This document shows positions 892-27,870 of a DNA stretch of 64,000 bases, piece by piece; position 1 is the stretch's first letter; every line of letters begins with the position of its first letter. Below the pieces are notes generated by a model. The model did not search any database. It saw nothing but the letters and a program-made list of their open reading frames with translations, and was not told where the DNA came from. The position numbers and the translations under genes are program-made. This stretch comes from Lepidodermella squamata (Eukaryota; Animalia; Gastrotricha), in assembly GCA_047495785.1 (NCBI GenBank), contig JBLDXI010000013.1:2046001-2110000 (forward strand), written 5' to 3'.

Positions 892-3004
892 ATGTTGCCC
901 TACTTCGAATTTCTAATCGTATTTGCTAGTTTTGCTCTCGTCAAAGCTTACCCTCAGTATGCTGACCAAATTCCGAACGGTCGGAAGGTGCCTAATCCAT
1001 GCAAGCCATCTATGCTATGGACAGGCGTCGGCCATGAGCGTGTCCAAGGCCAGGGTCCTCTGAATAAATTCGGACAAGCCTTCCTAAGCGCAGGTAAAGC
1101 TTGGAACACCGGTCTTTGCCAACAGGACAGTGACGGGGATGGCAGGACGAATGGCGAAGAGCTCGGCGATCCTAACTGCCAATGGCAACCAGGTCAGCCT
1201 AACCCCACACCAAGTGGAATGATGTCGAGCGTTAGTCACCCTGGAATTTGCGAGCCAATCAATTCAGCAAAATGTCAATCACTGAACGGGAAATTTCTGG
1301 AAAATGTCGAAGGTTGCTCCAAGGCTTCGGCGACAGACTGGTGCCCGCCTGTTTACGATCCTAGGCTAAATGTCCGCAACATAACGATGCTTTACAACAG
1401 CGTTGAAATCCCATCTGATCAAACTACATACTTTTGCCAGCAATTTGACCTTCCTGGAGACACTGAATATTCAATAATTGCCGTAAAAATATCGAAAAGT
1501 TTAGACATTTTTTTAAGATTTTTTTTTTTTTACAGTGGGAACCGATTATTGATAACCAAGAATTGTTGCATCATTTAGTTTTGTACTCGTGTAACTCGCT
1601 GAAAGAAGAAAGCATTCTAGCCGATTCTTACACCACAGCTAGCGTTTGTGGTATGACTCCATTGAGTGAATTGAAAAAGTAGGTTTTCGAGAAATCGCTC
1701 CTCAATTCCAAATTTTTCCAATTAAATAGGAATGCCTGTGGCAATATGGTTGCTGTATGGGGATTCGGGGTTACCGAGAAGAGATGCTACAGCAGTGAAG
1801 TTGCCATTGAAATGGGCACTAACACCTTCCGAAAAGTCATCGTCAATCTTCACTACAACAATCCGAGTCTGAAATCAGGCCAACTCGATTCGAGCGGCAT
1901 CAGGATTTATTACACAGAGGCAGCTAGGTTGAGGCGACCTTACAAGGCAGCTATGCTCGCGTTAGGCCAGACTGACATCGCCCTCCCGCCTGGCTATCCG
2001 GACATCAGCGTCAATGCTCTGGCCTTCAACAATGATTCAGACTGTAGCCGGAAGTATTTGAAGCCCTACTCGACGTATTACCTATCCGCGATTTACTTCC
2101 ATATGCACATGATCGGATGGCATGCTAAGGCGATAGTTCGCCGGGCCGATTCGAACAAAATTGATACGATTATCGATGAAGATGTCACCTATGACCGGCC
2201 CGTGATTAAAGTTTTCAACGATCGATACTCGACAATAACTATCAACCCAGGGGATGAATTATTTGCTGGTAAACAAATTTTCGCAATTTTACTGGAAAAT
2301 TAAAAGAAATTCATCGCCAGAATGCACGTATAGGACAATTGGAAAGCAGGGTTACACATTTTTCGGGCCCGAAACCAGCGATGAAATGTGTATAGCTTTC
2401 ATCGAAGTCTATCCAAGGCCCAATGATACCAACTACCTCGGGCTATTCAGCTTTAATGAAGTAATGTTTGACTTAAAATCAGCGCTTATAGCTCGAACTA
2501 TTTGTTTCACAGGCTAACAAGTGTACTTCACAAACTGGTACACTTTCCGGTTGCGATTTCACGGCTTTTTCAGCTACAATGCTGTATCTGTATGCGGTTG
2601 GTGGAACTCAAGATATATTGGCAGCTTGTCTGGGATCCTTAGCAACATTCCCGAATGGAACTTGCAACCCGAGATGCCGAGCGTAATTAAAATTTCAAAT
2701 TTCCACCTATTGAATACAGTTTTTTCATTTTTCCAGAGGATTGGATAGGTACAACTTACTGAGAGAACCTTGCATAATGAGTTCCGTGTTCCGGAACTAC
2801 ATAATGAGCGCTGATGTAGACCTGAAGCAAGCTTACGAAATTCAATGGACACTAGTGCCTTGTCTGTCCATTCGAAGGCAGGACTATCCGCAAATCAAAG
2901 ATGTGGCCTACGTCCGAATCCCGCCAAGCTATTCGACTGGCTTAAACCAAGCTCCATCCTTCGTGTTTATAACACTTTGTTCCTTTATTATTTTGATGTT
3001 TTAA
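892..3004 (+). CDS. Temptin-domain copper type II monooxygenase (DBH/MOXD1-like), paralog 1; 6 exons, probably GPI-anchored
   Basis: Signal peptide MLPYFEFLIVFASFALVKA; temptin motifs YPQY..QIPNG..VPNPC, GVGH, DSDGDGRTNGEELGDP, SHPGICEP; CuH ligands LLHHL and LHYNNP; CuM ligands FHMH and DEMC; hydrophobic C-terminus. Introns 1483-1535, 1679-1729, 2269-2320, 2461-2512, 2683-2736 keep the frame. Confidence 0.9.
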
Positions 3005-3353
3005 GATAGCCGAGTGAATTTTCATGGAATAAAGTTTGCATGAGAACATTTCTAAAAAAAGTTTTACGTTAAATTGAGCGACGTGGTTGTTGAGGTTAAA
3101 GCGATGTAGGGCAAAAAATTTAGCAGCGCATGTCGCGCGACCTGGTAATAGATGACTTATACTTGGTACCTTAACGGTATACGTGATAATTTTCAACTGC
3201 GCGTGTTGGCACTTGGTATAAACGCGGCGTCCAACACTTTTCTACCCTCCATCTTGATGGGGTGTCATTGGGAATCAGGTTAAGCGGCGATCATGCGCTT
3301 ATATAAAGGCGCCCTCCACCTTAACATTTTATACCTATCAATTTGTATTCAAA

Positions 3354-3800
3354 ATGCTGAGATTTCTGCTTTTGTTGTCCATCGTTTCTCTTGCCTTTTG
3401 CCGCCCGGAATTTCAGAATGAAATCCCGAATGGCGGTTCAAATCGATCCTTGCGATGGCGATCTGACATGGCTGGGTGTTGGTCACGTGATTGTCGAAGG
3501 TCATGGCGCGTTCAATTCATTCGGCCGCGATTTCCTAGAAGCAAGAAACCGATGGACGGTATCACTTTGTCGAGAGGACAGCGATGGCGACGGCCGAACT
3601 AACGGCGAAAAACTAGGCGACCCTGATTGCCTATGGAAAAAGGGCTGGCCGAACCCTGAAGGCGATGTCAGTCACCCTGGTGTATGCGAACATATCACTC
3701 AGACTTCTGTCGTGAGCGAAACCGCTTCCCGGAGAAAATCGACACTTGCAGTGTGGCTCTCAAAATTAATACCAATGATTGGTGCCCTCAACTGAAAACC
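3354..3800 (+). pseudogene. Frameshifted, truncated temptin(-monooxygenase) paralog
   Basis: Signal peptide + RPEFQNEIPNG in one frame; DPC..WLGVGH..DSDGDGRTNGEKLGDP..SHPGVCE in a second; ..DWCPQLK in a third (frameshifts near 3435 and 3690). It then stops abruptly at the inverted copy of paralog 1. TATA-like TATATAAAG at ~3300. Confidence 0.8.
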
Positions 3801-4260
3801 AGGCTGACCCGGCTGCCATTGGCAGTTAGGATCGCCGAGCTCTTCGGCATTTGGCCTGCCATCGCCGTCACTGTCCTGTTGGCAAAGACCGGTATTCCGG
3901 ACTTTACCCGCGCTTAGGAAGGCTTGTCCGAATTTATTCAGAGGTCCCTGGCCTTGAACTTGCATGGATTAGGCACTTTTCGACCGTTCGGAATTAGGTC
4001 AGCATACTGAGGGTATGATTTTACCTGGGCAAAACTCGCGGCAACTAATTATAAACGCCCGAAGTAGGGCAACATGATAATGCGAAAATTTGTGCGGGAA
4101 TTCGTATACTTCAGCTGCGGACTTTCCAAATCTTTATTCAATCGATGCCTCCCGCCTGCTTCATTCATGGGTATTCAGAAGCCGTGGTTGATTCATCTTT
4201 TAGTACATTTCTTGAATTAAAACACCATTGAACTAGGGATGAATACATGTCTTGAAATTC
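3801..4260 (-). pseudogene. Inverted partial duplicate of paralog 1 upstream region and 5' coding sequence (source ~712-1200)
   Basis: Reverse complement matches 712-1200, e.g. QGQGPLNKFGQAFLSAGK..GLCQQDSDGDGR..EELGDPNCQWQPGQP and upstream gaatttcaagacat..gaatacccatgaa. An internal deletion of ~35 bp removes the W.GVGH codons. Confidence 0.9.
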
Positions 4261-4928
4261 CGGCCTGTCGATATCACATTATTCTGTTCTGTTGGACTAT
4301 GATGAACTTGTGGAATGAACTGCATTTTGCTTAAAAAATTGATAATTCAACATTCTTCCTGGGTCCTGGGGCAATGCATGTAAAAGCCTTCCAAGCCTAT
4401 GCTTAGAAACGGTCCTAAGGCTGGAACTAGCTGGATATGACTCCAATGGAAGAAATTGGCTCTTCTGGTTTGTTAGTCTGATTTACAAGTTTCTTTGTAT
4501 GTAGTCCAAATGGTTTATCAAAGATCCACCGTAAAAGTAGATAAGCGATTCCTCAATTGTCAATTGCCGCAGGTATCTCTATGGTTCTGGCTTTAATTCA
4601 AAAGTTCACGTGTTCACGTTGTTTCTCATTTCAAGTTGAAATAACTCAAAGTGAACCCACGAACATGAACTTCGTCATCCCTCGGGCTTCAAACCTCACG
4701 TCGGATACCTATTTCTGATTCGATATGAGGCATGAAAGAATGGTTGCCCGGAATTCTTCATTGTTTTTGTTGCACAGCCCTTGTTGCCTATCAAAAAGCA
4801 AGAATATTTGTCAAAAATAAACGCCGGCTGGTTTATTGATTCAAGGGGTTATCTAATAAAGAAAAGCGTGCACAAGTCAAAAGCAGGTGGGTCATCAGAT
4901 GATATCCATGCAGATAAGGCTCAAACTG

Positions 4929-6624: not shown

Positions 6625-9171
6625 ATGCAGTTTCGATATTACCCTTTAATAGTATTACTGCAATTTTTTCACTCATCAACCGCTTTTCCCGAGTATGCAG
6701 ACTCAATTCCAAATGCGCGAAGTGTCGTTAATCCCTGCAACACAAACCTGAAATGGGCTGGTTTGCCTTAAAAAATTCATTTTTACGGCATTTTAAGGAG
6801 GTTTAATTACCAGGTGTTGGCCACGAGAGATCAGGCGGGCAGGGCCCTCTAAACAAATTCGGCCAAGACTTTGTCAGAGCTGGCAAGTCTTGGACGGTAT
6901 CTCTATGCCGGCTCGACAGCGATGGGGATGGCAAAACCAACGGAGAAGAGCTTGGAGATCCGTGGTGCACATGGACATCAGGCCAATCAATCACCTCCAA
7001 TCAAATAATGAGTAGCATGATATCCCACCCTGGCATCTGCGAGCCGATCAATTCTCCCCGTTGCAAGGCCCTGAATGGCGATTTCGTCTACAACATCCCC
7101 GAATGCGCGACTTCGAAAACAGCTTGGTGCCCTGAGATTTACAATCCTAGTCTCCAAGTAGATACTAGAACTCTGTCTTTCAATAATTATCAAGTACCCG
7201 CAGTTCAAACCACCTACGCTTGTTTACAATTCGACCTACCTGGCGATATTGACTACACATTGCTAGCAGTAGGTTTCTTAATTACCTGAATTTCGTACTA
7301 CAGCGTGTCCCACAAGTTGCGCAACCATTTCAGTTTCGGAATTTTTTTAATTTGTTTAAAGTTTTTTTTTATTCAATTTTTAATTAATTTAATTGAAATT
7401 AATTTAGTTTTTCAATTTAAAAAAAATCACTTTATTAATTCAAGCCCATTGGAGGAATCTTCCATCCATTACCAAAGGAATAAACAATTTACCGGAGAAA
7501 ACCGTGAAAACCCCGATGGTAACTGGTTCGGTAATTTTCGGTTTTTACCTGGTTGCATCACATTTCTTCGGATTTTTTAATCCTATTTACAAGAGACATA
7601 CTTGATTACCATTCTTATGGCATTTTACATTTTTCTGAGATTTTTCTTGCTATGAGAAGATGTGACTTCCCCTCTCATTTTAGAGTTTCTGATCCCTTTT
7701 CCGTGCGATGCTCATACGACTCGCTGTATTCTATTTTTCAGTATGAACCCTTGATTGACAATCAAGAGCTGGTCCACCATGTTATTTTATACACCTGCAA
7801 CTCTCTGCATGAAGAAGATCGACTCGGGTACCAGTATCTCACGCCAGGCGAGTGTGGCATGACTCCGGTTTGCTGGAACATGGCTATTGGCTGGGGCTTC
7901 GGATCTGGAAATGGCCGGTGCTACAACGATAATGTCGGAGTTACCATGGGCAGGAGCACGTTTCGCAGGGTTCTGTTGCAAATCCACTACAACAACCCAA
8001 GATACAAGTCAGGCCAAAAAGATTCATCCGGGCTGAAACTATACTACTCCCCTGCCCATGTCGCAAGGCGCCAGTACAGCGCTGCGATGGTTGGTTTCGG
8101 CCAGAATGATATCGGATTACCGCCGGGTATGCCGGAAGTTAGCATCCAGTCGTGGGCGTTCACCAACAGCTCGGCGTGTAGTCGAGCAAAATTGAAGCCT
8201 CATTCCAAGTTCTACGTTTTGTCGATGATGTTCCACATGCATATGCTAGGGTACCATGCGAAACTGGCGATTCGGAAAGCTGGTACCAACACCTGGGTCA
8301 CGGTTGTTGATGATGATGTGACATATGATAGACCGAAGATAATCTTCTTCAACGACCAAAGCAAAGCTCCAGTAATCGAGCCTGGGGACGATTTATTCAT
8401 TGGTAATTTTCGATAAAAAAATGGGTCGAATTTGTTCATTTGATTTTAAATAGAATGCACTTACCGAACCGCTGGCATGAATTCTCACACTTTTTTCGGC
8501 CTTGAAACAATCGATGAAATGTGCATAGCTTTTTTCGAAATCTACCCTCGTCCCGATGAAAGAAATTACTTGCCTCTGTACAATTTTGGCGATGTAAGTC
8601 TTGATATTTCATTTATCTCTCCACCTCAAATATTTGTTTTTAGATGGGAGACTGTATGGATATTCCGAACGAAGTGACTAATGTGACGACAAAGGAAATG
8701 TACGGCTGTGATTTGAAGCCTTTCATGGACTCTCTTGAGCTCATCAGCACTACAGCTGAATCAGGCCGAAAGTTCAACGACAGCTGCTATTCAAACACCC
8801 AGGATAACATTTGCCGAAAACAATGCGCAATGTAAGCAAATTTTCAAAATCTCGATTTTCGGACTTTGAATTTTTTACTTTGTAGCGAGTTGGATAAGTA
8901 TAATCTACGGAATAGTTCTTGCATGCTTGGAACAGCTTTTCGCTACTACGCCAAGCGATCGATCGCCAATCTTGTCGATGTTTATAAGCTGCAATGGGGG
9001 ATCCTCCCTTGTTTGAATGTGAAACAGGCGAATTTTCCAAAAGTCAAGAATTCCTGGTACATAAGACCGGCGAGAAGTAGTTCGCCTTCAAACTATGCAG
9101 CTCTGCTTCAGATTCTTGCTTTGATAACTTTTTACTGTTGTGATTTCAACAATATTTTACTATTATTTTGA
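6625..9171 (+). CDS. Temptin-domain copper type II monooxygenase, paralog 2
   Basis: ATG 6625 MQFRYYPLIVLLQFFHSSTA-FPEYADSIPN; GVGH, DSDGDGKTNGEELGDP; VHHVI, QIHYNNP, FHMH, DEMC; hydrophobic tail. Large intron 7269-7741; other introns ~50-55 bp. Confidence 0.9.
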
Positions 9172-9436: not shown

Positions 9437-11651
9437 ATGGAGAAAGTTCTGCTTTTTCTTATTGGCTGTGTTCTTACACTCTACGATGCTAATCCCACGG
9501 AGGCTTTCCCAGAATTCCTGGATTCGATTCCGAATGGGAAAAATGTTATCAATCCTTGTGATCGCAATCTCAAATGGGCAGGTAATTAGTTTCGTTCTTC
9601 TTTAATCCCATTAATAATCCTATTCCCATATTTTCAAGGCGTTGGTCATGAGTTAGTTGGCGGGCAAGGCCCTTTGAACAAATTTGGCCAAGACTTCCTC
9701 AAAGCCGGTAAAAACTGGACTCAGTGGCTATGCAAGCAGGACAGTGACGGTGATGGTCGGACAAATGGAGAGGAATTAGGCGACAAAAGTTGTACCTGGA
9801 AACCAGGTCAATCCGACCCGGTTTCGACTGGCATAACGCATCCTGGAATTTGCGAACCAATTGATTCCGATAAATGCAAGACGTTGAATGGCGAATTTCT
9901 TAAGCAGGTACCTGGCTGCTCGTCACCGAACAATACGTGGTGTCCGGCGATCAATAACTCGAGTCTTCAAGTCCAGACGAGAACCCTGATGTTTAACAAT
10001 TATTCCATACCAGCGCTTCAGACGACATATGCCTGTCAGCAATTTACATTATTTACGGACGATGCCGATTATTCTTTGATTGGGGTACGTATTAGTTCAA
10101 TTACTAGCCTAGGGTTAAGGGGTCAAGTCGGTGGGAAAACATAAAAAATGATCGATTAATTTTAGAATTTTTTTAGAACATTTTCGGATTTAATTTGTAA
10201 TTTAGAATTGAAAAATGAATTAATGTTTTATATGTGTCATTTTTATTAATTTCCAGTTCGAATCAATCATCGATAATCAAGAGCTTACGCATCACATCCT
10301 TATATACTCCTGTCACCCTGGCGATGAAGAAGGCAATCTTGGTAATAAATATCAGACCCCCGAGGAATGCGGAATGACCCCAGCCTGTTGGAGCATGTCC
10401 ATCGGCTGGGGATTCGGTCACCGGAAAGGCCGGTGCTACAACAACGATGTCGCCGTAACCATGGGCAAGAGTACCTATCGAAAGGTTGTCATGCAGCTTC
10501 ACTACAACAACCCAAGGCTGAAAAGTGGCCAGCGAGATTCCTCTGGAATACGCCTTTATTTCTCCCCGGCTTCGGTCGCTAAGCGTCAGTACAGTGTTGC
10601 GCTGTTAGGCTTCGGCCAGAGCGATATTCATCTGCCGCCAGGAATGCCTGAAGTCAGCATTCAGTCGTGGGCATTTGTCAACAGTTCGCGATGCAGTACT
10701 GTCAGGCTGAAGCCATATCCGAAATACTACTTGAATGCTGTAAATTTCCATATGCATTTGATCGGTTATCACGCAAAGCTGGCAATTAGGAAGGCAGCGA
10801 CAAAATCGATGATCACTGTCATAGACGAAGATGTAACCTACGACAGGCCGAAGTTGGTTGAATATTCTGATAGAAGCAAAGCACCTGTAATCGAACCTGG
10901 CGACGATATTTTCATCGGTTGGTTTTTTCGCGTTGATTTTATGTGAAAACAGTCATGAATTTTAACAGAATGCACTTATCGAACGAATGGGACTACAACA
11001 CACAAGTTCTATGGGCCGCATACGTCGGATGAAATGTGCATTGCTTTCATCGAGGTCTACCCGCGACCCCAGGATCTCGACTTTTTGAGCCTATTCAACT
11101 TTGGTGATGTAAATTAAAAGGGCAATTCAAAGCTCCTTTTTTAATTTGTTCCATATTTTCTAGCTCAGCGAATGTATGGACAACGACGTTTACCCTTGCA
11201 ATCTGACTTCATTCTCGCCAGCCATGGAGCGTCTGATTTCAAATTCGACCTTGTTCGGGCAATTCAATTCTAGTTGTTATTCCGACAAAATTGGCGCTGA
11301 TTGCTCTGCTAAATGCGGAAGGTATGAAAAGGTTATTTTATTTCGAGAAAATTTCCACTGATTTTTTCTAGTGAGCTCGATAAGCATGGCTTGCGGAACC
11401 ATTCATGCATGCTTGGGCCTGTTTTCCGATACTACGTCCAAAAAATAGCCCCTCATCTTTCGGAAGCGTTCAAGCTCCAATGGGGTGTCATCCCGTGCCT
11501 AAATATTGAACAACGAAATGCTAATGCTATCATCAATCCGTGGTATATTAGACCAACGATGCAGGTCAACATCGCAGCCAGAAATAAGGCTTACAGTCTA
11601 TTTGATTTGTTTGCATCCGCAATATTTTTGATCATTTTCAATAAACTATAA
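9437..11651 (+). CDS. Temptin-domain copper type II monooxygenase, paralog 3
   Basis: ATG 9437 MEKVLLFLIGCVLTLYDANPTEA-FPEFLDSIPNG; DSDGDGRTNGEELGD; THHIL, QLHYNNP, FHMH, DEMC; hydrophobic tail; intron 10085-10256. Confidence 0.9.
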
Positions 11652-14542: not shown

Positions 14543-17238
14543 ATGACTAAGATTTTTCTGACATTTTGTCTCCTACTGGCAAATCCGAGCTGCTTGGAGG
14601 CTTATAAAAGTTTCAGAACAACCATTCCCAATGGCCTGAATGTCCCTCACCCATGCAAGTCTTCAAGCCTTTTTTGGGCGGGTATTTTTTCTCAATTTAT
14701 CGTCTGAGATTGATACATTCGTTGACTAATTAGGAGTCGGACACGAAGCCCCAGAAGGTGCTGGCCCTCTGAACTCTTTCGGAAGGGATTTTCTAGCAGC
14801 GGGCAAAATTTGGACAGAAAAGCTGTGCCGGGCTGACAGTGACGGTATAGACGACGGTTCAGGGCTTTAATTCCCATTAATTGAACGATTTTAGGTGATG
14901 GGAAAACGAACGGGCAGGAATTGGGCGATCCTAACTGCGTTTGGACACCCGGAGCGACTCCAGCGATTGTTGATGCTAAACAGCTCTCTCATCCAGGCGT
15001 TTGCGAGCCGATAAATGCGCCAACTTGCACGAAATTGAACGCATTTCTGTCGAGCATCGACATTTGCGTGGCAGCCTTAGGTGGTTCTAACCCAGGCGAT
15101 TGGTGCCCTGCTGTTAGGGCGGATGGTGTGAAATTCATCGAATTCAAATACGACTCTGTTCAAATACCGGCACAGGATACTACCTACTACTGCAAACAAG
15201 CTATTTTCCCGAACGACATGGAATATCATATCATTGCTGTAAGTGAAGCTGACCTTTTTCGAGAAAAATCGCGATCCCTTTAATTCAAAATAATTTTAAA
15301 ATAATATAAAAATTCGAAATTCCAACCGATGAGTAACTTCATTTTTTCGGGGTTTCCCAATTTTTCACCATAATATTAAAATCGCCCTGCTACATTGTTT
15401 AATCAGCGGTGAAGTTCTCGGCAGTAATTAGAAATAGGGTTCCACTAAATTCTTAAAAATTTCAACCATAATTTGCGCCAAGTCGATATCGATTTTAAGT
15501 ACTGATTTTAACAACCAATGACTTTTCGGATCTAGTTATTGGCAAAATGAACAATTTCGATCCTACAACAAAAAATCCTTAGGTCATCATTTTTGATTGA
15601 GGGCAAAAGTCGAAAAATTGGACAAATTTAGTGCTGGAATCTAGAACCAGCTTGGAAGCCAAATGTCAACTTTGTGAATGTTTGACCCTGAGAGATATAA
15701 TATTCCAAAAAAGAAACTTGTAATGAAATTTGATGACTTTTTATAGTGGGAACCACTCATCGACAATCGAGAAATGTTCCACCACATTGTAATGTACAGC
15801 TGTGACGTCGATGGCGAACAAGAGTTGCAAACGACTAAGAAATACGAGAAACCCGAGTCTTGCGGCATGACCCCTCGAGAATGTTCAGATATGGCTTTTG
15901 TCTGGGCCTTCGGGCAGGGCCCCCGGTGCTACAGCAGCAACGTCGGTATACCAGCCGGGAAAAACAGCCGAAAAACATTCCTACTACAGCACCACTACAA
16001 CAACCCTTTCAAATTGCCTAACGTCGTTGATTCATCCGGAATTCGAATTTACTACACCACGACGAAGCGGATGTATGAAGGCGCGATGATGGGTATTGGC
16101 CAAATGGATATCATGATTCCGCCGGGTCAAAAAGCAACCGTCACTGCCAGGCCATTTTTAGGATCAGACACCTGCAGCCGGCAAAGCCTTGCGCCGAACA
16201 ATCAATATTACATGTCGTCAATGCTGTTTCACATGCATAAAATCGGAGTTTATGCTAAACTCGATTTAATCAAGCCAGACGGTCGAAAAATTTCAATTAT
16301 CAACCAAACAGCAACTTACGACCGGCCGCCAATGCTTACCTGGACGCAGGAGAACTCACCGGTTATTCAGCCGGGTGACGATTTCGAAATATCATGCACA
16401 TTTGACGCGTCTATTTCGCCGGACTACAAACAACAGTACACGTTTTTCGGCGAAAAAACGCAAGACGAAATGTGTTTCGCTTTCATGGAAAGTATGCAAT
16501 TTACTTCTTCATTTTTGGGTAAAATTCGAGTATTTTTCTGTAGTTTATCCACGACCAAACAATCGACCAGATCAGCAGTTTATGAACTTCGACAATGTAA
16601 ATAATTACTCCCGATTTTTTTAATATTTTTTCTAACATTTTGTCCCAAAGATGAATCACTGTCTGTGGGCTGGCGGTCAGCAGGTGGTAAAGTTACAAAA
16701 TTGCGAGAACTTCGACGCTTTCCAGCAGAACATGACTAAAAGCATGCAATCAGCCGATAGCGCTGATTGGCTGGCGAAATGCAAGGCAGAGACATATCCA
16801 GCCACTTCTTGTCCAAAGAGTTGCGCCCAATTTCTCGACAAATACGGCCTTCTCGAGAATCCGTGCTTGAAGGGGCCCGTTTTCCGCTTTGCTGGCGGTT
16901 TCATGATATCGCAGACGTATTCCGACATTTATTCAGTTCAATCGACGACAGATTTGTGCACGAAAGCTAGTTTGAATCCAAGCGTTAACCCCGTCCCGCC
17001 AGCTACAGCTACAACTGCTCAGCCTGCTTCGGGAATGAATGAGGCGCCAACAGGTGCATCAGGTAACAGAGCGTCAGCAACTGCGTCAGGTAACAGCGTT
17101 ACAGGAATGGTTTTCACTGCTGGAGAAGGCTACGGCAGCACACCTCAACCTGGAGCTAGCAAGAATGCGGCGTTTACTGCGAAGTGTGGACCTTATATTG
17201 CCATTATCCTTGTAATGATTATGATGTCACTATTTTGA
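14543..17238 (+). CDS. Temptin-domain copper type II monooxygenase, paralog 5
   Basis: ATG 14543 MTKIFLTFCLLLANPSCLEA-YKSFRTTIPNG; extra intron within DSD|GDG; FHHIV, QHHYNNP, FHMHK, DEMC; Ser/Thr/Ala stalk and GPI-like tail; intron 15239-15746. Confidence 0.9.
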
Positions 17239-18363: not shown

Positions 18364-21300
18364 ATGAGCTCTTTTTGGCTCCTAGCTTTTCTACCATTCC
18401 TTATTGAAGCCTACCCTAGCTATAAAAACAGCATTCCTAATGGGAACAACGTTCCTCACCCTTGCAGTCAGGGGCAGACGTGGTCAGGTTAGTTGATTGA
18501 TTTTAGGTTTCATCAGCCCTAATTCTGCTGGCAGGAGTGGGACATGAAGCGTCACAAGGAGCCGGTCCTTTAAACGTATTTGGTAAAGCCTTCCTCAATG
18601 CTGGTAAAACCTGGACTAAGGCTTTATGCATGGCTGATTCTGATGGTTAGATCAATTTTTTCATTTGGGGTAAACAAAAACAATAAAATTTTTAAGGCGA
18701 TGGTAAGACAAATGGCCAGGAACTCGGTGATCCTGGCTGCGTTTGGACTACCGGTGCAGTGCCGACAATGACTGATGTCAAGATGCTAGGCCATCCAGCA
18801 ATTTGCGAGCCAATCAATTCGACGAATTGCAGGGCTAACAATGCGTTCCTTCTCAGTAATCCATCATGTGCAACTCTGATGGGCGGAAGCAGCAGTGGCT
18901 CTAGTGGCGATTGGTGTCCTGCTATTAAGGGCGCTGATGTCAAGGTGATCGAATTCCGCTATAACAACACCCAAGTTCCAGCGCAAGAAACCACTTACTT
19001 TTGTCAACAAATCAAATTTCCGTCCGATGACGACTATCACATTATTGCGGTAAGTTTTTATTACAAATCAGCTCTCGAATCACCCGATGAATCATCAATG
19101 GCTCCTCTCCATGCCATTATATAGTTCATTTGTAGCGTCCAAAATTAGGACCTCAATTTGTTTGGCTAAGCGTTAGCTCGAACCATAGACATAATTTAGG
19201 ATAGACTGCTTACTCACGAGAAAAAGGGTGCTACGCCATGGGCACCAGATGGTCAGCTGATTCATCAGCGCTTGGAGGAAAAGTAAACAAAATATTCGAT
19301 TCTTTTTTTACTGGTTCCGTGACGGTTTCGATTTTCCCAAGGTTATCGTTGACGGATCCAGACAGAGGAAATCACGAGGAAGACGCTGATTATTTTTTCA
19401 AAATTTTTGAAGGAATTTTAACTGGTTTTATAAACCAAAAACGGTTTTGCAGTTATAAATAAAAATATATTTCACAGTCATTTAAATTGAAATTGAAGCA
19501 GTTTTTTGATGGTCCAGGTAGCCCACATCGTGGTCCACATTTCAATACTTGGAGGGACCTTCGATGATTTTTTACTGATTTTCTAAGAATTTTCAAAATA
19601 TCACCAAGCGAAATTGGCATTATATTGAAAGAAAAGCCCTACTACAATCTTTTTCCAGCTACGCCATGTGGGTGTGGCGCACGTGCTGTCAACATAGATT
19701 CCAACTCGAAACCTCCAGTTTTTAAATAGCTGGAGGTTGAGATTTCTTTTCTAAAATTCTTAGAAAATCAGTAAAAAATCATCGAAGGTCCCTCCAAGTA
19801 TTGAAATGTGGACCACGATGTGGGCTACCTGGACCATCAAAAAACTGCTTCAATTTCAATTTAAATGACTGTGAAATATATTTTTATTTATAACTGCAAA
19901 ACCGTTTTTGGTTTATAAAACCAGTTAAAATTCCTTCAAAAATTTTGAAAAAATAATCAGCGTCTTCCTCGTGATTTCCTCTGTCTGGATCCGTCAACGA
20001 TAACCTTGGGAAAATCGAAACCGTCACGGAACCAGTAAAAAAAGAATCGAATATTTTGTTTACTTTTCCTCCAAGCGCTGATGAATCAGCTGACCATCTG
20101 GTGCCCATGGCGTAGCACCCTTTTTCTCGTGAGTAAGCAGTCTATCCTAAATTATGTCTATGGCTCGAACTGTAACCTCATTTCCGACAGTGGCAAATGA
20201 AAATGAAAAAAATGTTTTCCTTAGCTAGGGACATTCATTATTATTTTCCCATGACTAGGAATAAGAATCATGAAATCCTCCGATAGAGATAATTACGCGT
20301 TACGCGTATAGTAAATATGAGAAGATTTCCAATAAGTAAGACCGCCATTCGTGCCAGGCAGTGTTGACCTAGTTTCGGACAATCGGGAACCACGCAAAAG
20401 TAACACACTTTAACGATGATTGCGCACCCTTAATGCGACAAATCTCGTGGGAATCCTCGACACCTTGGCCTTGAATTGAAAAAACTAGAAAAATGGGGGC
20501 TAAGGGCCCGCTCTGATGGTTCCGAATATATCCAAGTCTTTTCACCATTTTTCGAGTGGAGCAATATGGGATTCCTTAGAAGATATTAGTAGCTAATATC
20601 CTCCTTATACTCGAATACCAAATAATGAAAAATAATTAATGAACATTTGATTTTTTAGTGGGAACCGATCATCGATAAGCGTGAGATGTTCCATCACATG
20701 GTTGTGTTTGGCTGCAGCAGCCAAGGCGAATATCGGTTGCAAGTGCAGAAGAAATTCGAGAAACCAGAATCTTGCGGCATGCAGCCTAACGAATGCCCTG
20801 ACTTCACTATTGTTTGGGCATTCGGGCAGGGCCCAAGGTGCTACGATAGCAACGTCGGTGTTCCAGTTGGCAAGAACTTCTTCAAAACCCTGCTACTACA
20901 ACACCACTACAACAACCCTTACTTGGTTCGGGATACTACTGACTCGTCAGGAATTCGCATTTACTACACCACGAAAAAGCGACCGAATGACGCTTCGATG
21001 CTAAGCGTCGGTCAAATGGATATTTTATTGCCGCCAAAGCAAAAAACGGCTGTTTCGGCTAAATCATTCATGGGCTCGAAAGACTGCAGTCGTAAAGCGC
21101 TCGAGCCCCAGCAAAAAGTCTACTTTTCATCTATGTTGTTCCACATGCACCACTTGGGCGTTTATGCCAAGTTGTTCATAGCAAAACCAGACGGTAGACG
21201 GCTGCAGGTGATCAACGAGGCGGTAACTTACGATCGCCCGCCCTTGCTGACATGGTCGCAAGACAGTGCCCCGGTGTTGGAGGTTGGCGATGAAATCGAA

Positions 21301-22089
21301 ATCGAATGCACCTACGACGCGAATATGCGCGAATATTCGCGGGTCAACTACACATTCTTCGGAGAAGGAAGTCAGGATGAAATGTGCTTCGCTTTCATCG
21401 AAAGTATGCAGTTTTTTCGCCAAATTGTTTTACCGTATTTCAATCATTTTTTTCAGTTTTCCCCAGGCCTGGGGACAGAGCTTACATGTCTTATAGCTAT
21501 ATCGATGAAGTAAGTCATTTTCTTCAGAATATTCGGAAAAATAATCGGCTATATGCAAATAGATGAATGACTGCGTTTGGAGCGATACGCGGGGAATGGG
21601 ACCAGAGAAGCTGAAAGAGTGCGATAAATTTCGCCCCTTCAAAGACAAGTTCACCAGCATAATGCGATCGCCTGATGGCATGCGGTGGATGGAAGATTGT
21701 TACACGGACAATTATCCAGCGACTTCGTGTCGCCAGGGATGTCTTGAGTAAGTTAGGGAAAAATTTGAAAAAATTATTTATAAGCGGTGATTTTTAGTTT
21801 TCTGAACAAATACAACATGACGAATGACCCGTGTGTTCGCGGGCCGGTTTTTCGGTACAACGGTGGCTTTTGGATTTCGCCGAATTACAGCCCGATTTAT
21901 AGCATTCAATCGAACATGGAGTACTGCATTACGGGGAAATCTGGCGAAGTTGCCGCTACAACGAAAGCGCCGGGTGATTCTTCCTCGGTTGCTGCTACTA
22001 CCACCAAAAAGCCGAAAAATAGCGCTTCCAAAATGCTATATTCATTTAGTAACTTGATATTTATTATCATTGCATTACAGCTGAGTTAA
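18364..22089 (+). CDS. Temptin-domain copper type II monooxygenase, paralog 6
   Basis: ATG 18364 MSSFWLLAFLPFLIEA-YPSYKNSIPNG; FHHMV, QHHYNNP, FHMHH, DEMC; GPI-like tail; 1.6-kb intron 19050-20658 contains a foldback element. Confidence 0.9.
19184..20162. mobile_element. Non-autonomous foldback DNA transposon (979 bp, ~410-bp TIRs, 8-bp TSD; P/Galileo- or hAT-like)
   Basis: Arms 19184-19593 and 19753-20162 are reverse complements (the same spurious 74-aa ORF is called on both strands). Termini CATAGAC...GTCTATG; flanking direct repeat GCTCGAAC at 19176-19183 and 20163-20170; empty site in the paralog at 25737-25744. Confidence 0.92.
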
Positions 22090-23500: not shown

Positions 23501-23859
23501 TTTAACCCTTTCACGGCGGGAAGGACGATTTCGGAATTTCGACTTTGAAAATTCGCAGAAAATCGAATTTGATGAATTCTTATCAGCCCTTTTGAGGAAT
23601 ATTGCTTTTCGATGTTGGCTACAATGTTTTGAAACCAGGACTGCGTTATCTTGCATGGCCAGGACATACTAGCAATTTTAAAATAGTCAACCTGACATTG
23701 AAATTTCGATTTTTTTCAACTTGAAATCTCATAGGTTTCTGATCATGTTTTGATCCAACAAAAAATATCACCGTGTCTGCCATAGTCTAATTGACCTCTG
23801 TGTAAATTCTTTCGAGTTGGAAATTAAAAATGACGACGCTATTGAGATTTAATCAAAAC

Positions 23860-24139
23860 GGCCGAATTCGTCCTATCCGCCCAGACTTATACAGGTGGAG
23901 TGCGTGATTGTTGTGCTGCAAAAACTGTCGCGAGGAAATACTGGAAAAGCTGAATTCAGATCTGAATGCTGAGCCTCTAAAACTTCTTCAAACTAAATTT
24001 TTTCGGTGATATAAGTGAGGGAGAATATTCGGGACATTCGTGGGAGTAATTTAGAATCTAAAATTCCAAAGCTCAAGGCATCTGACTCAGAAATTAGGGT
24101 GCTCGAAAAATCAGCTGGGCGGATAGGACGATTTCGGCC
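23860..24139. mobile_element. Putative MITE with 25-bp terminal inverted repeats
   Basis: ggccgaattcgtcctatccgcccag (23860-23884) versus ctgggcggataggacgatttcggcc (24115-24139), 1 mismatch; no clear TSD. Confidence 0.55.
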
Positions 24140-24383
24140 AGTTTTTGTACAGCCTCAACGCTGATAGATAAAGACAAACGGATTTAAAAATCGTCATCAG
24201 GGCCTTCGAAAACCCCTAGAACTGCCGTCAAATATTTTTTCTACCGCAGATATATAATTCCACCATGAAAGTGTTAATGAGGAAAATGTTGAAAAAGGCA
24301 CTCGGCACTTTAAACCGCTACACCGACGATATGTTGCCAGGACACAAATAAGGATTTTTATGTTTTCATGTTTTATTTACCAG

Positions 24384-27300
24384 CTGCCCTCGTTATGGAT
24401 GTGTGGTAATGAACTGCTGATGTTAAACGACAACTTAACGGAAATCAAAACTAATTCAAATTCACTCCTCAGGGTTAAAATCGATATAAGGATATAAGGA
24501 GGGTTAGGGAAGTCAGTATAGTCATAGGGTAAAACATTTAGGTGTAAAAACCGACTAATGCATTAATCACCTGCCATAATCGCTCTCGTTTTCATGTTTT
24601 CGTCATCGCGTGAGCCCTACGTGTTTTGACGGCATGGTAATGTTTACTTTGCGGAAATACAAAGCGTTTTTTCCGAGTTGAGTGTAAACGGGATGTCACT
24701 ATCGTTTTTTCTTTAAGAAGCATCTCAAATAATGGATGATATCGTTAAATAATCACATTCACTCATTGTATACTTACTTTAAAAAATGAGCTCTTTTTGG
24801 CTCCTAGCTTTTCTACCATTCCTAATTGAAGCCTACCCCATCTATAAAAACAGCATTCCTAATGGGAACAACGTTCCTCACCCTTGCAGCCAGGGGCAGA
24901 TGTGGTCAGGTTAGTTGATCAATTCCATGTCTGGCACTTTTAATTCGAAAATTCGTGACAGGAGTGGGACATGAATCGCCACAAGGAGCCGGTCCTTTAA
25001 ACGTATTTGGTAGAGCCTTCCTCAATGCTGGCAAAACCTGGACCAAGGCTTTGTGCATGGCTGATTCTGATGGTTTGATGATCAATTTTTACGTGAGAGG
25101 CAAAAAATGACAAAACATTTTAAGGCGATGGCAAGACTAATGGCCAGGAACTCGGTGATCCTGGCTGCGTTTGGACAACCGGTGCAGTGCCGACAATGAC
25201 TGATGTCAAAATGCTAGGCCATCCAGCAATTTGCGAACCTATCAATGCGACCAATTGCAGGGCCAACAATGCGTTCCTTCTCAGCAATCCATCTTGTGCA
25301 ACTCTGATGGGCGGAGAAAGCAGTTCTAGTAGCGATTGGTGTCCTGCTATTAAGGGCGCCGATGTCAAGGTGATCGAATTTCGCTACAACAACACCCAGG
25401 TTCCAGCGCAAGAAACCACCTATTTTTGTCAACAATTCAAATTCCCGTCTGATGACGACTATCACATTATCGCGGTAAGTTTTAATATTTGTAAATGAGC
25501 CGCTCTAGAATCACCCAATGAATCATCAATGGCTCCTAACATCTCTATCATGTCATTCACTTCAATTTTAGCGTCCAAAATCGGGACTTCATTTTTTAGG
25601 CCGATCGTTAGTTCCGACTCATTTCAAGTTTTAGAATAAACCAGCTCTCGAATCACCCGATGAATCATCAATGGCTCCCCTACCTGTCATTTTTAATGTC
25701 TGAAATTAGGACCTCAATTTCTTTGGCCAAGCTTCAGCTCAAACTGTAACCTCATTTCCGACAGTTGCGAAGGAGAAGGGAAAAAATGCCTTCCTGATAA
25801 CTTGGGACATTATCATTTGTCTATGGGCAGGGGTTAGAAATCGAAACATTTTCCGATAGATAAAATCACCCTGATTGATAGTATAAATGATACCTAGTAT
25901 AAATGACAAGGTCAATAATTAAGACCGCTAAACGTGCCGAGAATTGTTGACCTATTTTCGGACAATCTGAACCACACAGATGTGACACACTTTGAAGATG
26001 CTTGCGCATCCTTACGTGATACATTTCGTGGAAATCCTCGACACATCAGCCAAAATGGGGAATTATTTGGGCCAACGAAGGCAGCGAAGGGTTGACAGCC
26101 CAGATGAAACTTTGAGTAGGGTCATTCGAGATTCCTGAGATTTTGGTGCCTATTAATCTTTTTTGTACCCGAAGTCCAAATAATGAGCAATTATTATATT
26201 TGATTTTTAGTGGGAGCCAATTATCGATAAGCATGAGATGTTCCATCACCTGTGTCTTATTGGATGCAGCAGCCAAGAAGAATATCGGCTGCAAGTACAG
26301 AAGAAATTCGAGAAACCGGAATCGTGCGGCATGCAGCCCAGCGAATGCCCTGACATCACTATTGTTTGGGCATTTGGCCAGGGACCAAGGTGCTACGACA
26401 GCAACGTCGGCGTTCCGGCTGGCAAAAATTTCTTCAAAACCCTGCTACTACAACACCACTACAACAACCCTTACCTAGTTCGAAATGTTACTGATTCATC
26501 AGGAATCCGCATTTACTACACCACGAAAAAGCGACCGAATGACGCTATGATGTTAATCGTCGGTCAAATGGATATTTTGTTGCCGCCGAAGCAAAAAACG
26601 GCTGTTTCGGCTAAATCTTTCATGGGCTCAAAGGACTGTAGTCGAAAAGCGCTCGAGCCGCATCAAAAAGTCTACTTTTCATCTATGTTGTTCCACATGC
26701 ACCACTTGGGCGTTTATGCCAAGTTGTTCATAGCAAAACCAGACGGTAGACGGCTGCAGGTGATCAACGAGGCGGTAACTCACGATCGCCCGCCTGTGTT
26801 GACCTGGACACAGGAAAAAGCTCCGATGGTGGAGGTGGGCGATGAAATCGAAATCGAATGCACCTACGACGCGAATATGCGCGACTATTCGCGGGTCAAC
26901 TACACATTCTTCGGAGAAGGAAGTCAGGATGAAATGTGCATCGCTTTCATCGAAAGTATGCAGTTTTTCATCAAATTATTTCAACAACGTTTAATCTTTT
27001 CTTTTATAGTTTTTCCCAGACCTAGGGGCAGAGCTTACATGTCTTATAGCTATATCGATGAAGTAAGTCATTTTCTCCAGAATATTCCGAACAGATCTGC
27101 TATATGCAAACAGATGAATGATTGCGTTTGGAGCGATACACGGGGAATGGGACCAGAGAAGCTGAAAGAGTGCGATAAATTTCGCCCCTTCAAAGACAAG
27201 TTCACTAGCATTATGCGATCGCCTGATGGCAAGCGGTGGATGGAAGATTGTTACACAGACAATTATCCAGCGACTTCATGTCGCCAGGGATGTCTTGAGT

Positions 27301-27870
27301 AAGTTCACAAAATGTTGAAAAAATTATTTATAAGAGGTTATTTTTAGTTTTTTGAACAAATACAACATGACAAATGACCCGTGTGTTCGCGGACCTGTTT
27401 TTCGGTTCAACGGTGGCTTTTGGATCTCGCCGCGTTACACCCCGATTTACAGCATTCAGTCGAACATGGAGTATTGCATTACAGGCAAATCTGGCGAAGT
27501 TGCCGCTTTAACGAAAGCGCCAGCTCCGGTTGATTCCATTACGGCTGCTGCTACTACTAACAAAAAACCAAAAAATAGCGCTCCCAAATTGCATATATTG
27601 TATTTAATCTATTCATCCATTTACCTAATATTGATCATCTTCGCATTAATTCTGAGTCACCAGATATGGATTAACCAGTGAAATTAATAGTTATCCAAAT
27701 TTTCATTATAGCTTATAATCAAATTTTCGAGTAATTAACCATACAAAGTTTGGATATTGCATCTCATAATTTTCTGACTGCAAAAGTAATGGATCATTGG
27801 AAATGTATAATAATAAATTATCTAATGAAGCCCACTCTGTTCTGACATAAAATTTGTCTAAATCGGATAA
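24384..27870 (+). repeat. Recent segmental duplicate of ~17948-22290 (paralog 6 unit including upstream region)
   Basis: Similarity starts at ctgccctcgttatggatg (17948 and 24384) and continues through the upstream region, introns and 3' flank (atgaagcccact at ~22240 and ~27826). Confidence 0.85.
24786..27681 (+). CDS. Temptin-domain copper type II monooxygenase, paralog 7 (recent duplicate of paralog 6)
   Basis: ATG 24786 MSSFWLLAFLPFLIEA-YPIYKNSIPNG; FHHLC, QHHYNNP, FHMHH, DEMC; introns include 25475-26210, 26956-27009, 27063-27113. Confidence 0.9.

What the first reader, a model, noticed from the sequence alone, without database searches (positions are those of the whole stretch)
892..27681. 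Tandem array of GPI-type temptin-copper monooxygenase fusion genes
Seen: seven head-to-tail genes, plus an eighth at 57631, with signal peptide, temptin-like domain, a two-copper catalytic core with all ligands intact (HH, H, HxH, M), a Cys-rich domain and a hydrophobic tail; there is no DOMON domain. Known: temptin is an Aplysia water-borne pheromone-complex protein; DBH/TBH/MOXD1 carry an N-terminal DOMON, and PHM-type cores hydroxylate amines or peptidyl-Gly. Temptin-monooxygenase fusions are, as I recall, annotated in some molluscs but uncharacterised. Inference: an expanded, diversified battery of cell-surface oxygenases whose temptin module may bind ligand or Ca2+, for chemical-cue processing, detoxification or secretion curing.
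Basis: partly seen in the sequence, partly recalled or inferred. Interest (0 to 1): 0.75.

Follow-up and report, generated by a model that had tools for sequence, protein, structure and literature searches.

The report
Tandem temptin-domain copper monooxygenase genes
Seven neighbouring genes, plus an eighth nearby, encode secreted, probably membrane-tethered copper enzymes related to dopamine beta-hydroxylase that carry a calcium-binding "temptin" module instead of the usual DOMON module; the gene type was described in 2009, but nobody knows what it does.

Summary
The window holds eight intact genes, G1 and G3-G8 at 892-27681 and G9 at 57631-59580. Each encodes a signal peptide, a Temptin_C domain, a complete two-copper DBH/PHM-type core (HH, H, HxH and M all present), a Cys-rich region with no Pfam match, and a hydrophobic C-terminal tail. 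None has a DOMON domain.

The array belongs to a lineage-specific expansion of about 37 core-bearing copies in this 121-Mb genome, 25 of them within C13:1.99-2.36 Mb. The paralogs are old (32-59% identity). The one young pair, G7/G8, is under purifying selection (dN/dS 0.15).

The architecture is not new. Takahashi et al. 2009 described it, and it is widely annotated in molluscs, Lingula, a bryozoan, a flatworm and a sponge, often in multi-copy clusters. Its function is still untested.

New here:
- The family replaces the three DBH amine-binding residues and the PHM carboxylate triad with hydrophobic residues, whereas a canonical DOMON-TBH gene in the same genome keeps the DBH residues.
- The temptin domain is the most conserved part of the protein, has an invariant EF-hand-like loop, and has no structural match in the PDB.

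This scan already reported a sister array (s1-407592) on other DNA of this genome.

The parts
892..3004 (+). G1: temptin-monooxygenase gene, 6 exons, 616 aa
   Evidence: Pfam Temptin_C E 1.7e-37 on exon 1. Spliced model has no stops and all six Cu ligands.
3354..3795 (+). T1: temptin-only remnant with a 1-nt frameshift just after the IPNG motif (about 3434). It has no monooxygenase part and is a probable pseudogene.
   Evidence: Pfam Temptin_C E 1.3e-26 on frame 3391-3792. The three-frame read shows the shift.
3702..4039 (-). Inverted partial copy of G1 exon 1 (temptin fragment)
   Evidence: Pfam Temptin_C E 1.2e-17. 78% DNA identity to 925-1200 on the opposite strand. 91% aa identity to G1 over 54 residues.
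6625..9171 (+). G3: temptin-monooxygenase gene, 6 exons, 621 aa
9437..11651 (+). G4: temptin-monooxygenase gene, 6 exons, 609 aa
12136..14329 (+). G5: temptin-monooxygenase gene, 6 exons, 641 aa
14543..17238 (+). G6: temptin-monooxygenase gene, 6 exons, 659 aa, with a Ser/Thr/Pro/Ala-rich stalk before the tail
18364..22089 (+). G7: temptin-monooxygenase gene, 7 exons, 620 aa. Intron 3 (1609 nt) holds a foldback element.
24786..27681 (+). G8: temptin-monooxygenase gene, 7 exons, 633 aa. It is a young duplicate of G7 (91% aa identity).
57631..59580 (+). G9: temptin-monooxygenase gene, 2 exons (intron 59181-59234), 631 aa
   Evidence: Pfam finds three domains. AlphaFold2 model of exon 1 has pLDDT 86.9 and pTM 0.84. 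Foldseek matches DBH 4ZEL at 1.8e-23.
57685..57984 (+). G9 temptin domain (aa 19-118). It contains an EF-hand-like loop, D80-E91, at 57868-57903.
   Evidence: Pfam. D80, D82, D84, N88 and E91 are invariant in 98 family members.
58249..58254 (+). G9 CuH ligands H207 and H208. The third CuH ligand, H279, lies at 58465-58467.
   Evidence: Aligned to DBH H262/H263/H333. Invariant in 98 of 98.
58699..58707 (+). G9 CuM ligands H357-x-H359. The Met ligand, M434, lies at 58930-58932.
   Evidence: Aligned to DBH H412/H414/M487. Invariant in 98/98 and 97/98.
59524..59577 (+). G9 C-terminal hydrophobic tail (GPI-signal-like). Equivalent tails end every other copy.
   Evidence: Kyte-Doolittle scan of the last 35 residues of all eight models.
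61100..61664 (+). T2: intact stand-alone temptin gene (171 aa, intron 61233-61281) with a signal peptide and its own hydrophobic tail
   Evidence: Pfam Temptin_C E 5.2e-26. Splice model. 46-58% identity to all fusion-gene temptin domains.

Best explanation
Shown: the region is a head-to-tail array of seven intact paralogues, with an eighth 30 kb downstream, of the temptin-monooxygenase hybrid family. This is a branch of the DBH/PHM two-copper monooxygenases in which a temptin domain occupies the N-terminal place that DOMON holds in DBH. The array belongs to a lineage-specific expansion of about 37 copies. The genes are old, intact and constrained.

Inferred: each protein enters the secretory pathway and ends up on the extracellular or luminal face, held there by a GPI anchor or by its C-terminal hydrophobic segment. 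Two coppers, bound by HH+H and HxH+M, use O2 and an external reductant such as ascorbate to hydroxylate a C-H bond, as in DBH and PHM.

Inferred: the residues that hold the amine of dopamine/tyramine in DBH, and those that hold the peptide carboxylate in PHM, are replaced by hydrophobic residues. The substrates are therefore probably neither phenylethylamines nor Gly-extended peptides. They are more likely hydrophobic small molecules or groups on secreted matrix material. Pocket positions differ between subfamilies, which suggests different substrates.

Inferred: the temptin domain is the most conserved part of the protein and carries an invariant EF-hand-type DxDxDGxxNxxE loop. It most likely acts as a Ca2+-stabilised docking or regulatory module.
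For: - Domain architecture: Pfam finds Temptin_C, Cu2_monooxygen and Cu2_monoox_C, and no DOMON.
- Gene integrity: eight stop-free spliced models.
- Similarity of the core: it aligns best to human DBH 4ZEL (9.4e-29), then to PHM (about 2e-12), with all ligands in register. The AlphaFold2 model (pLDDT 86.9) matches DBH and PHM by Foldseek.
- Ligand conservation: the six ligands are invariant, or 97/98 for the Met, across 98 family members and in all eight window copies.
- Substrate residues: the equivalents of DBH E265/E366/Y491 are L/V/I, M/T/L and others, and F. The equivalents of PHM R240/N316/Y318 are hydrophobic (residue roles from PMC3197665).
- Control: the canonical DOMON-TBH gene of the same genome (L029; Pfam) keeps E, E and Y.
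- Selection: G7/G8 dN/dS is 0.15 at dS 0.30. All other pairs are saturated at silent sites yet intact.
- Temptin conservation: mean pairwise identity is 61% for the temptin domain, against 48-52% for the core and 28% for the C-terminal region.
- Tail: the hydrophobic C-terminus is present in the window copies and in 72 of 102 homologues.
- Expansion: all copies from this genome, together with a few ENA metagenome sequences, form one clade (SH-aLRT 99) apart from the mollusc, brachiopod, bryozoan and flatworm clade and from the sponge clade. There are 86 exon-level matches in the genome.
- Literature: a TBH/temptin protein is a major nacre matrix protein in abalone (PMC6003135). Temptin-like genes are among the most mantle-specific genes in zebra mussel (PMC9210306).
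Against: - No activity, copper content, localisation or expression data exist for these genes, or as far as I could find for any member of the family.
- No GPI predictor was available. G8 has a long tail followed by 7-8 polar residues, and G9 has a weakly hydrophobic tail. Both could be transmembrane anchors, or poor signals.
- From my memory, vertebrate MOXD1 has a similar tail yet stays in the ER.
- The mapping of pocket positions rests on sequence alignment to DBH/PHM, and the E366-equivalent lies in a variable stretch.
- Conserved ligands do not prove catalysis. A ligand-poor paralogue is reported elsewhere in this genome (s1-394243; I did not check it).
- The matrix role is taken from molluscs, and this animal is not known to make a shell.
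Confidence: 0.6

Rival explanations
1. They are ordinary tyramine/dopamine beta-hydroxylases that make octopamine or noradrenaline in secretory vesicles, with the tail acting as a vesicle membrane anchor.
For: The closest solved structure is DBH. Many database homologues carry automatic names such as 'tyramine beta-hydroxylase-like'.
Against: - The genome has a separate canonical DOMON-TBH gene. It scores far higher against the Pfam models (206 and 137 bits, against about 53 and 69) and against DBH (4.6e-128), and it keeps E265/E366/Y491.
- The temptin family has hydrophobic residues at all three positions in 98 of 98 members.
- About 37 diverged copies is hard to reconcile with a single neurotransmitter step.
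Confidence: 0.05
2. They are catalytically active copper monooxygenases that reside inside the ER or secretory pathway, like vertebrate MOXD1. The C-terminal hydrophobic segment acts as a membrane anchor, so they are not GPI-anchored at the cell surface.
For: The architecture resembles the MOX/DBH clade, with a signal peptide and a C-terminal hydrophobic segment. G8 has about 25 hydrophobic residues followed by 7-8 polar ones, which is long enough to span a membrane.
Against: - In six of the eight copies the hydrophobic run reaches the last residue or stops within four residues of it. It is preceded by small residues (N-S-A, N-A-A, S-T-G, G-T-A) and in G6-G8 by a Ser/Thr/Pro-rich stalk. This is the usual layout of a GPI signal.
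- A mollusc member is found in the extracellular shell matrix (PMC6003135).
Confidence: 0.25
3. They are mainly non-catalytic binding or signalling proteins, that is, membrane-tethered temptin pheromone-like molecules, and the monooxygenase part serves only as a scaffold.
For: - The temptin domain is the most conserved part.
- Stand-alone temptins exist next to the enzymes, and in Aplysia and Biomphalaria they act as attractants (PMC10075465).
- A copper-site-poor paralogue is reported elsewhere in this genome (s1-394243, unchecked).
Against: All six copper ligands are invariant across 98 members and in all eight copies, over divergence that has saturated silent sites. That is not expected of a mere scaffold. 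The core is under purifying selection in G7/G8 (omega 0.14).
Confidence: 0.07
4. They are peptidylglycine alpha-hydroxylating (PHM-like) enzymes for peptide amidation.
For: They share the fold and the ligands with PHM.
Against: The PHM residues R240, N316 and Y318, which hold the peptide carboxylate and backbone, align to L, F and V in G9 and to hydrophobic residues across the family. The core is much closer to DBH than to PHM.
Confidence: 0.03

Closest known systems
Temptin/mono-oxygenase 'hybrid' genes of lophotrochozoans (Takahashi et al. 2009, PMC2762978). These are today's automatic annotations 'DBH-like monooxygenase protein 1/2', 'tyramine beta-hydroxylase-like', 'MOXD1 homolog' and 'Temptin', with Pfam architecture PF24784+PF01082+PF03712.
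   Same: - They have the same three Pfam domains in the same order and no DOMON.
- The Ca-loop and the copper ligands are invariant.
- Most members have a C-terminal hydrophobic tail.
- Molluscs also carry multi-copy clusters on one contig: Sinanodonta, Bulinus, Patella, Dreissena, Haliotis.
   Different: - The copies in this genome form their own strongly supported clade on a long stem, joined only by a few unnamed ENA metagenome sequences. They are 32-38% identical to mollusc members.
- The expansion (about 37 copies in 121 Mb) is large.
- The 2009 claim that the hybrid is restricted to Lophotrochozoa no longer holds, because a sponge (Sycon) protein has all three domains.
Dopamine beta-hydroxylase, tyramine beta-hydroxylase and MOXD1/2 (DOMON-containing copper type II monooxygenases; structure 4ZEL)
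   Same: - The two-domain CuH/CuM core has an identical ligand set.
- DBH is the best sequence match and the best fold match.
- There is an extra C-terminal region after the core.
- The proteins follow the secretory route.
   Different: - The N-terminal domain is a temptin domain instead of the Ig-like DOMON sandwich.
- The amine-binding residues E265/E366/Y491 are replaced by hydrophobic residues.
- The genuine DOMON-TBH orthologue exists separately in this genome.
Peptidylglycine alpha-hydroxylating monooxygenase (PHM, 1PHM/1OPM)
   Same: The catalytic fold and the six copper ligands are the same.
   Different: The substrate triad R240/N316/Y318 is absent. Similarity is lower than to DBH. 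Extra N- and C-terminal domains are present.
Aplysia/Biomphalaria temptin (water-borne protein pheromone component)
   Same: The domain is the same (Pfam Temptin_C), with the DSDGDG calcium motif and conserved cysteines. A stand-alone temptin gene also lies in this window.
   Different: Here the domain is the N-terminal module of an enzyme. The window's stand-alone temptin has a hydrophobic C-terminal tail, so it is not obviously free and water-borne.

Membership tests
Copper type II ascorbate-dependent monooxygenases (PHM/DBH superfamily) | Cu2_monooxygen (N) and Cu2_monoox_C (C) domains above the Pfam cut-offs | tested here: met
   in G9, 68.9 bits (cut-off 30) and 52.8 bits (cut-off 23). 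The other copies also score above the cut-offs.
Copper type II ascorbate-dependent monooxygenases (PHM/DBH superfamily) | CuH ligands (HH plus a distal H) and CuM ligands (HxH plus M) in register | tested here: met
   Aligned to DBH and PHM. Present in all eight models and in 97-98 of 98 family members.
Copper type II ascorbate-dependent monooxygenases (PHM/DBH superfamily) | Two beta-sandwich catalytic fold | tested here: met
   AlphaFold2 model with pLDDT 86.9. Foldseek matches 4ZEL at 1.8e-23 and PHM entries at about 1e-18.
Copper type II ascorbate-dependent monooxygenases (PHM/DBH superfamily) | Copper-, O2- and reductant-dependent hydroxylase activity | not testable with these tools
   This needs a recombinant enzyme assay.
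DBH/TBH/MOXD subfamily | N-terminal DOMON domain | tested here: not met
   Pfam finds no DOMON in any window copy. DOMON is found only in the separate gene on C12.
DBH/TBH/MOXD subfamily | Phenylethylamine-binding residues E265, E366 and Y491 (human DBH numbering, PMC3197665) | tested here: not met
   These positions hold hydrophobic residues in all eight copies and in 98 of 98 family members. The control gene L029 keeps them.
PHM | Peptide-binding residues R240, N316 and Y318 | tested here: not met
   One search aligns them to L, F and V in G9. Across the family these positions are hydrophobic.
Temptin-monooxygenase hybrid family (PF24784+PF01082+PF03712) | N-terminal Temptin_C domain with the DSDGDG Ca motif, followed by both monooxygenase domains in one protein | tested here: met
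   All three domains lie in one open frame in G9. Spliced models give the same layout for the others. The motif is invariant.
Temptin-monooxygenase hybrid family (PF24784+PF01082+PF03712) | Groups with known members rather than with DOMON-type enzymes | tested here: met
   218 homologues were found; each of the 120 listed carries at least one of the three domains, and all but a few short entries carry all three. In the tree, rooted on the genome's own DOMON-TBH, the window copies sit inside the temptin-type ingroup as a separate clade.
GPI-anchored proteins | N-terminal signal peptide | tested here: inconclusive
   By inspection only. Each has a hydrophobic h-region and small residues at -3/-1 directly before the temptin domain. 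No SignalP was available.
GPI-anchored proteins | C-terminal signal: small omega residues, a short spacer, and a terminal hydrophobic run with no cytoplasmic tail | tested here: inconclusive
   The hydropathy scan and inspection fit for six of the eight copies. G8 (long run plus 7-8 polar residues) and G9 (weak run, KD 1.46) are ambiguous. No GPI predictor was available.
GPI-anchored proteins | Lipid anchor demonstrated (PI-PLC release, Triton X-114 partitioning) | not testable with these tools
   This is a bench experiment.

The most novel reading that the evidence does not exclude
The temptin-type enzymes may be an unexplored functional class of two-copper monooxygenases. In this reading, cell-surface (GPI-held) hydroxylases with a hydrophobic, amine-free pocket act on non-amine substrates such as lipophilic cues, toxins or secreted-matrix groups. 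The temptin domain has a fold with no solved relative, an invariant EF-hand-like loop and two near-invariant histidines (H49, H115). It would be an active partner that gives Ca2+-dependent docking to substrate or matrix, or delivers metal or electrons, and so would functionally replace DOMON. The expansion to about 37 genes would then be a substrate-range battery, comparable in logic to P450 or GST expansions.
Probability: 0.2. Interest if true: 0.65.

Novelty: new member of a known kind. Interest (0 to 1): 0.36.

Why it matters
DBH, TBH and PHM are the only two-copper monooxygenases of this fold whose substrates are known. MOXD1/2 and the temptin-type branch are orphans.

The temptin-type branch is large. 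It has dozens of copies per genome in molluscs and about 37 here. Its members are often mislabelled 'TBH-like' or simply 'temptin', so transcriptome and proteome studies read them as neurotransmitter enzymes or as pheromones.

Three results give concrete, testable reasons to treat the branch as a distinct enzyme class with unknown chemistry:
- The family has lost the amine- and carboxylate-binding residues while keeping every copper ligand.
- A genuine TBH coexists in the same genome.
- The temptin module is the most constrained part of the protein.

A compact genome with many intact paralogues is a convenient source of proteins for de-orphanising the class.

Tried and rejected
1. Structural relatives of the temptin domain. 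An AlphaFold2 model of aa 20-159 (pLDDT 89.8) gave no Foldseek hit in the PDB (best E 7.1) and no VIA-align hit with Z of 2 or more among 48,161 chains. The fold gave no functional lead.
2. Histidine-brace idea. Only G9 would start with His after signal cleavage. The other copies start with Tyr or Phe. Rejected.
3. Recent truncation origin of the stand-alone temptin T2 from its neighbour G9. T2 is 46-58% identical to every fusion-gene temptin domain. Not supported. Only the inverted fragment near G1 is a recent partial copy.
4. Enrichment of G7/G8 substitutions near the copper ligands. I found 6 in 55 columns against 8.6% overall, p = 0.33. Not significant. The two copies do differ at 3 of 5 pre-chosen pocket positions and at four consecutive residues after HH. 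I treat this as a post hoc lead only.
5. Search for near-identical sequences or transcripts in JGI metagenomes with a profile of the core exons. The best hit was 31% identical, so this gave no evidence on expression or on sister species.
6. Extra domains in the Cys-rich C-terminal exons. Pfam found nothing above its cut-offs.
7. Organism identity. I did not establish it. The nearest sequences are unnamed ENA metagenome contigs at 44-47% identity. Other agents of this scan guess a rotifer, which I did not test.
8. Joined spliced models. I used them only inside local scripts (alignment, dN/dS, tree). I sent them to no search or fold tool; those tools received single exons by reference.

Full report
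**What is in the sequence**

The window is eukaryotic DNA with about 42% GC and very short GT-AG introns. Pfam finds Temptin_C (PF24784, E 1e-34 to 1e-37), Cu2_monooxygen (PF01082) and Cu2_monoox_C (PF03712) in the long open frames between 892 and 27681 and at 57631. It finds no DOMON. tblastn with the 517-aa frame at 57631 places every copy on the + strand.

I resolved each intron by listing in-frame GT..AG pairs and scoring the joined peptides against an HMM built from 86 database homologues. Where scores tied, I used the splice consensus and the paralogous junctions. This gave eight stop-free genes of 609-659 aa:

| Gene | Coordinates |
|---|---|
| G1 | 892-3004 |
| G3 | 6625-9171 |
| G4 | 9437-11651 |
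| G5 | 12136-14329 |
| G6 | 14543-17238 |
| G7 | 18364-22089 |
| G8 | 24786-27681 |
| G9 | 57631-59580 |

The gaps between neighbouring genes are as small as 214-485 nt.

The joined models were used only in local scripts. All database, family and fold tools received single exons by reference, so no search was made with a joined model.

- A temptin-only remnant lies between G1 and G3 at 3354-3795. It has a 1-nt frameshift just after the IPNG motif.
- An inverted partial copy of G1 exon 1 lies on the minus strand at about 3702-4039. It is 78% identical in DNA and 91% in protein over 54 residues.
- An intact stand-alone temptin gene lies downstream of G9 at 61100-61664. It encodes 171 aa, has one 49-nt intron, and has its own signal peptide and hydrophobic tail.

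**Anatomy of the proteins**

All eight begin with a hydrophobic signal-like segment. It ends in small residues at -3/-1, directly before the conserved aromatic start of the temptin domain.

The temptin domain carries the motif DSDGDGxxNGxE. D80, D82, D84, N88 and E91 (G9 numbering) are invariant in 98 aligned family members, and their spacing is that of an EF-hand Ca2+ loop. H49 and H115 are present in 97 of 98.

The catalytic core aligns to human DBH (4ZEL, E 9.4e-29) better than to PHM (about 2e-12). HH, H, HxH and M are all in register. These ligands are present in all eight copies and in 97-98 of 98 family members.

An AlphaFold2 model of G9 exon 1 (516 aa, pLDDT 86.9, pTM 0.84) matches DBH and then PHM by Foldseek.

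After the core comes a Cys-rich region of about 150 residues with no Pfam match. In G6-G8 a Ser/Thr/Pro/Ala-rich stalk follows it.

In seven of the eight copies the protein ends in a clearly hydrophobic run with 0-9 residues after it, preceded by small residues such as N-S-A, N-A-A, S-T-G and G-T-A. G9's run is weaker (KD 1.46). The same kind of tail ends 72 of 102 database homologues, so it is a family trait. This layout suits a GPI signal. I had no predictor, and the tails of G8 and G9 are ambiguous.

**Evolution**

The paralogues are old, at 32-59% identity. They fall into subfamily A (G1, G3, G4, G5), subfamily B (G6, G7, G8) and G9 on its own. Silent sites are saturated for every pair except G7/G8.

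G7 and G8 are 91% identical, with dS 0.30 and dN/dS 0.15. By region, dN/dS is 0.10 for the temptin domain, 0.14 for the core and 0.19 for the C-terminal part.

Genome-wide, the G9 exon finds 86 exon-level matches. About 37 of these loci bear a core, and 25 lie within C13:1.99-2.36 Mb, which includes this window. Several temptin-only loci also turn up.

I built a tree from the core region of the eight window copies, 27 other copies from this genome and 45 database members, rooted on the genome's own DOMON-type enzyme. All copies from this genome, together with five unnamed ENA metagenome sequences, form one clade (SH-aLRT 99) on a long stem. That clade is separate from a mollusc/brachiopod/bryozoan/flatworm clade and from a sponge clade.

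The expansion is therefore specific to this lineage, and its subfamilies predate the split from the ENA relatives. I did not identify the organism. Other agents of this scan suggest a rotifer, which I did not test.

**What is already known**

The protein search returned 218 homologues. Nearly all of the 120 listed have the same three-domain architecture; a few short ENA entries lack one or two of the domains. They come from many molluscs, Lingula, the bryozoan Watersipora, Macrostomum and the sponge Sycon. [quoted passage not shown] Several species have many copies on one contig. The protein atlas gives the same picture.

Takahashi et al. 2009 (PMC2762978) described exactly this temptin/mono-oxygenase hybrid in Pomatoceros, Aplysia and Lottia and called it a lophotrochozoan novelty. 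The Sycon protein shows that this restriction no longer holds.

I found no functional study of the family. The scattered observations are:
- A 'TBH/temptin' protein is a major nacre matrix protein in abalone (PMC6003135).
- Temptin-like genes are among the most mantle-specific genes in zebra mussel (PMC9210306).
- A role for temptin in forming the prismatic shell layer is cited in PMC11464482 and PMC10075465.
- Snail studies count 'temptin-like' genes as pheromone genes.

Within this scan, a sister array 198 kb downstream (s1-407592) and a ligand-poor paralogue (s1-394243) were reported earlier.

**What they probably do**

The genome has a separate canonical DOMON-TBH gene on C12. Pfam scores it at 206, 137 and 49 bits, and it matches DBH at 4.6e-128. 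That gene keeps the three residues proposed to bind dopamine or tyramine in DBH: E265, E366 and Y491 (PMC3197665; alignment).

In the temptin family the same columns hold different residues:

| Reference residue | Residues in 98 temptin-family members |
|---|---|
| DBH E265 | L/V/I in 97; A in 1 |
| DBH E366 | M/T/L/V/S and others |
| DBH Y491 / PHM Y318 | F in 85; I/L/V in 12; 1 gap |
| PHM R240 | hydrophobic |
| PHM N316 | hydrophobic |

The chemistry (two coppers, O2 and an external reductant) is therefore probably kept, but the substrate is unlikely to be a phenylethylamine or a Gly-extended peptide. A more hydrophobic substrate is likely. The pocket columns differ between subfamilies and even between G7 and G8, at 3 of 5 pre-chosen positions. 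There is no general excess of G7/G8 changes near the ligands (p = 0.33), so I treat this only as a lead.

The temptin domain is the most conserved part of the protein, at 61% mean pairwise identity against 48-52% for the core and 28% for the C-terminal region. Its confident model (pLDDT 89.8) has no structural relative in the PDB by Foldseek or by VIA-align. Its role as a Ca2+-stabilised docking or regulatory module is an inference.

For comparison, the DOMON domain of DBH also has a putative group 1/2 metal site and an unknown, possibly regulatory role (PMC4846438).

**Verdict**

It is a new, lineage-specific and unusually large set of members of a gene type that is known but uncharacterised. 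It is not a new kind of gene.

GPI anchoring, expression and substrates remain untested.

Noticed in passing
window:19175-20171: A foldback element of about 1 kb lies inside intron 3 of G7. Its two arms are 424 nt long and 99% complementary, with 149 nt between them. The element is absent from the paralogous intron of G8, so it inserted after the G7/G8 duplication. Each arm carries the same 74-codon open frame.
   Followed up: partly
window:61100-61664: A stand-alone temptin gene (171 aa) has a signal peptide and a GPI-like hydrophobic tail. The genome search also shows a run of temptin-only matches at C13:2.198-2.216 Mb. Membrane-tethered temptins would differ from the water-borne Aplysia pheromone.
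   Followed up: partly
G000:C12:758300-760600 (L029:272-2023, minus strand): This is a canonical DOMON + Cu2_monooxygen + Cu2_monoox_C gene of 584 aa in a single open frame. It matches human DBH at 4.6e-128 and keeps E265/E366/Y491. It is the likely true tyramine/dopamine beta-hydroxylase of this animal.
   Followed up: yes
window:35460-43787 (minus strand): A single 2775-codon open frame contains 17 Cofilin_ADF stretches by Pfam (E 1e-134). A separate 162-aa cofilin frame lies at 28878-29366. The scan has already noted this (s1-384312).
   Followed up: no
window:30080-32506 (minus strand): Open frames here carry DUF6055 and an AbfB arabinose-binding domain. These are bacterial or fungal-type domains in an animal genome. 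The scan has already noted this as probable horizontal transfer (s1-384493).
   Followed up: no
window:4929-5348 (minus strand), 62021-62767 (+), 63149-63613 (+): Three small open frames have signal-peptide-like starts, low-complexity Gly/Pro/Lys-rich bodies and short C-x-C motifs near both ends. They have no Pfam match. They flank the monooxygenase genes and may encode secreted matrix-like proteins.
   Followed up: no
L030-L089 (JGI metagenome contigs): The profile of the core exons finds 60 distant Cu2-monooxygenase-like loci (22-31% identity) on metagenome contigs of up to 83 kb. Some are probably from microbes. I did not examine them.
   Followed up: no
L001 (ENA ERZ27333047 k141_687212): The nearest relatives outside this genome (44-47% identity) are unnamed metagenome contigs whose genes look compact and intron-poor. 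They interleave with this genome's subfamilies in the tree, so they come from a related, unsequenced or unlabelled lineage.
   Followed up: partly
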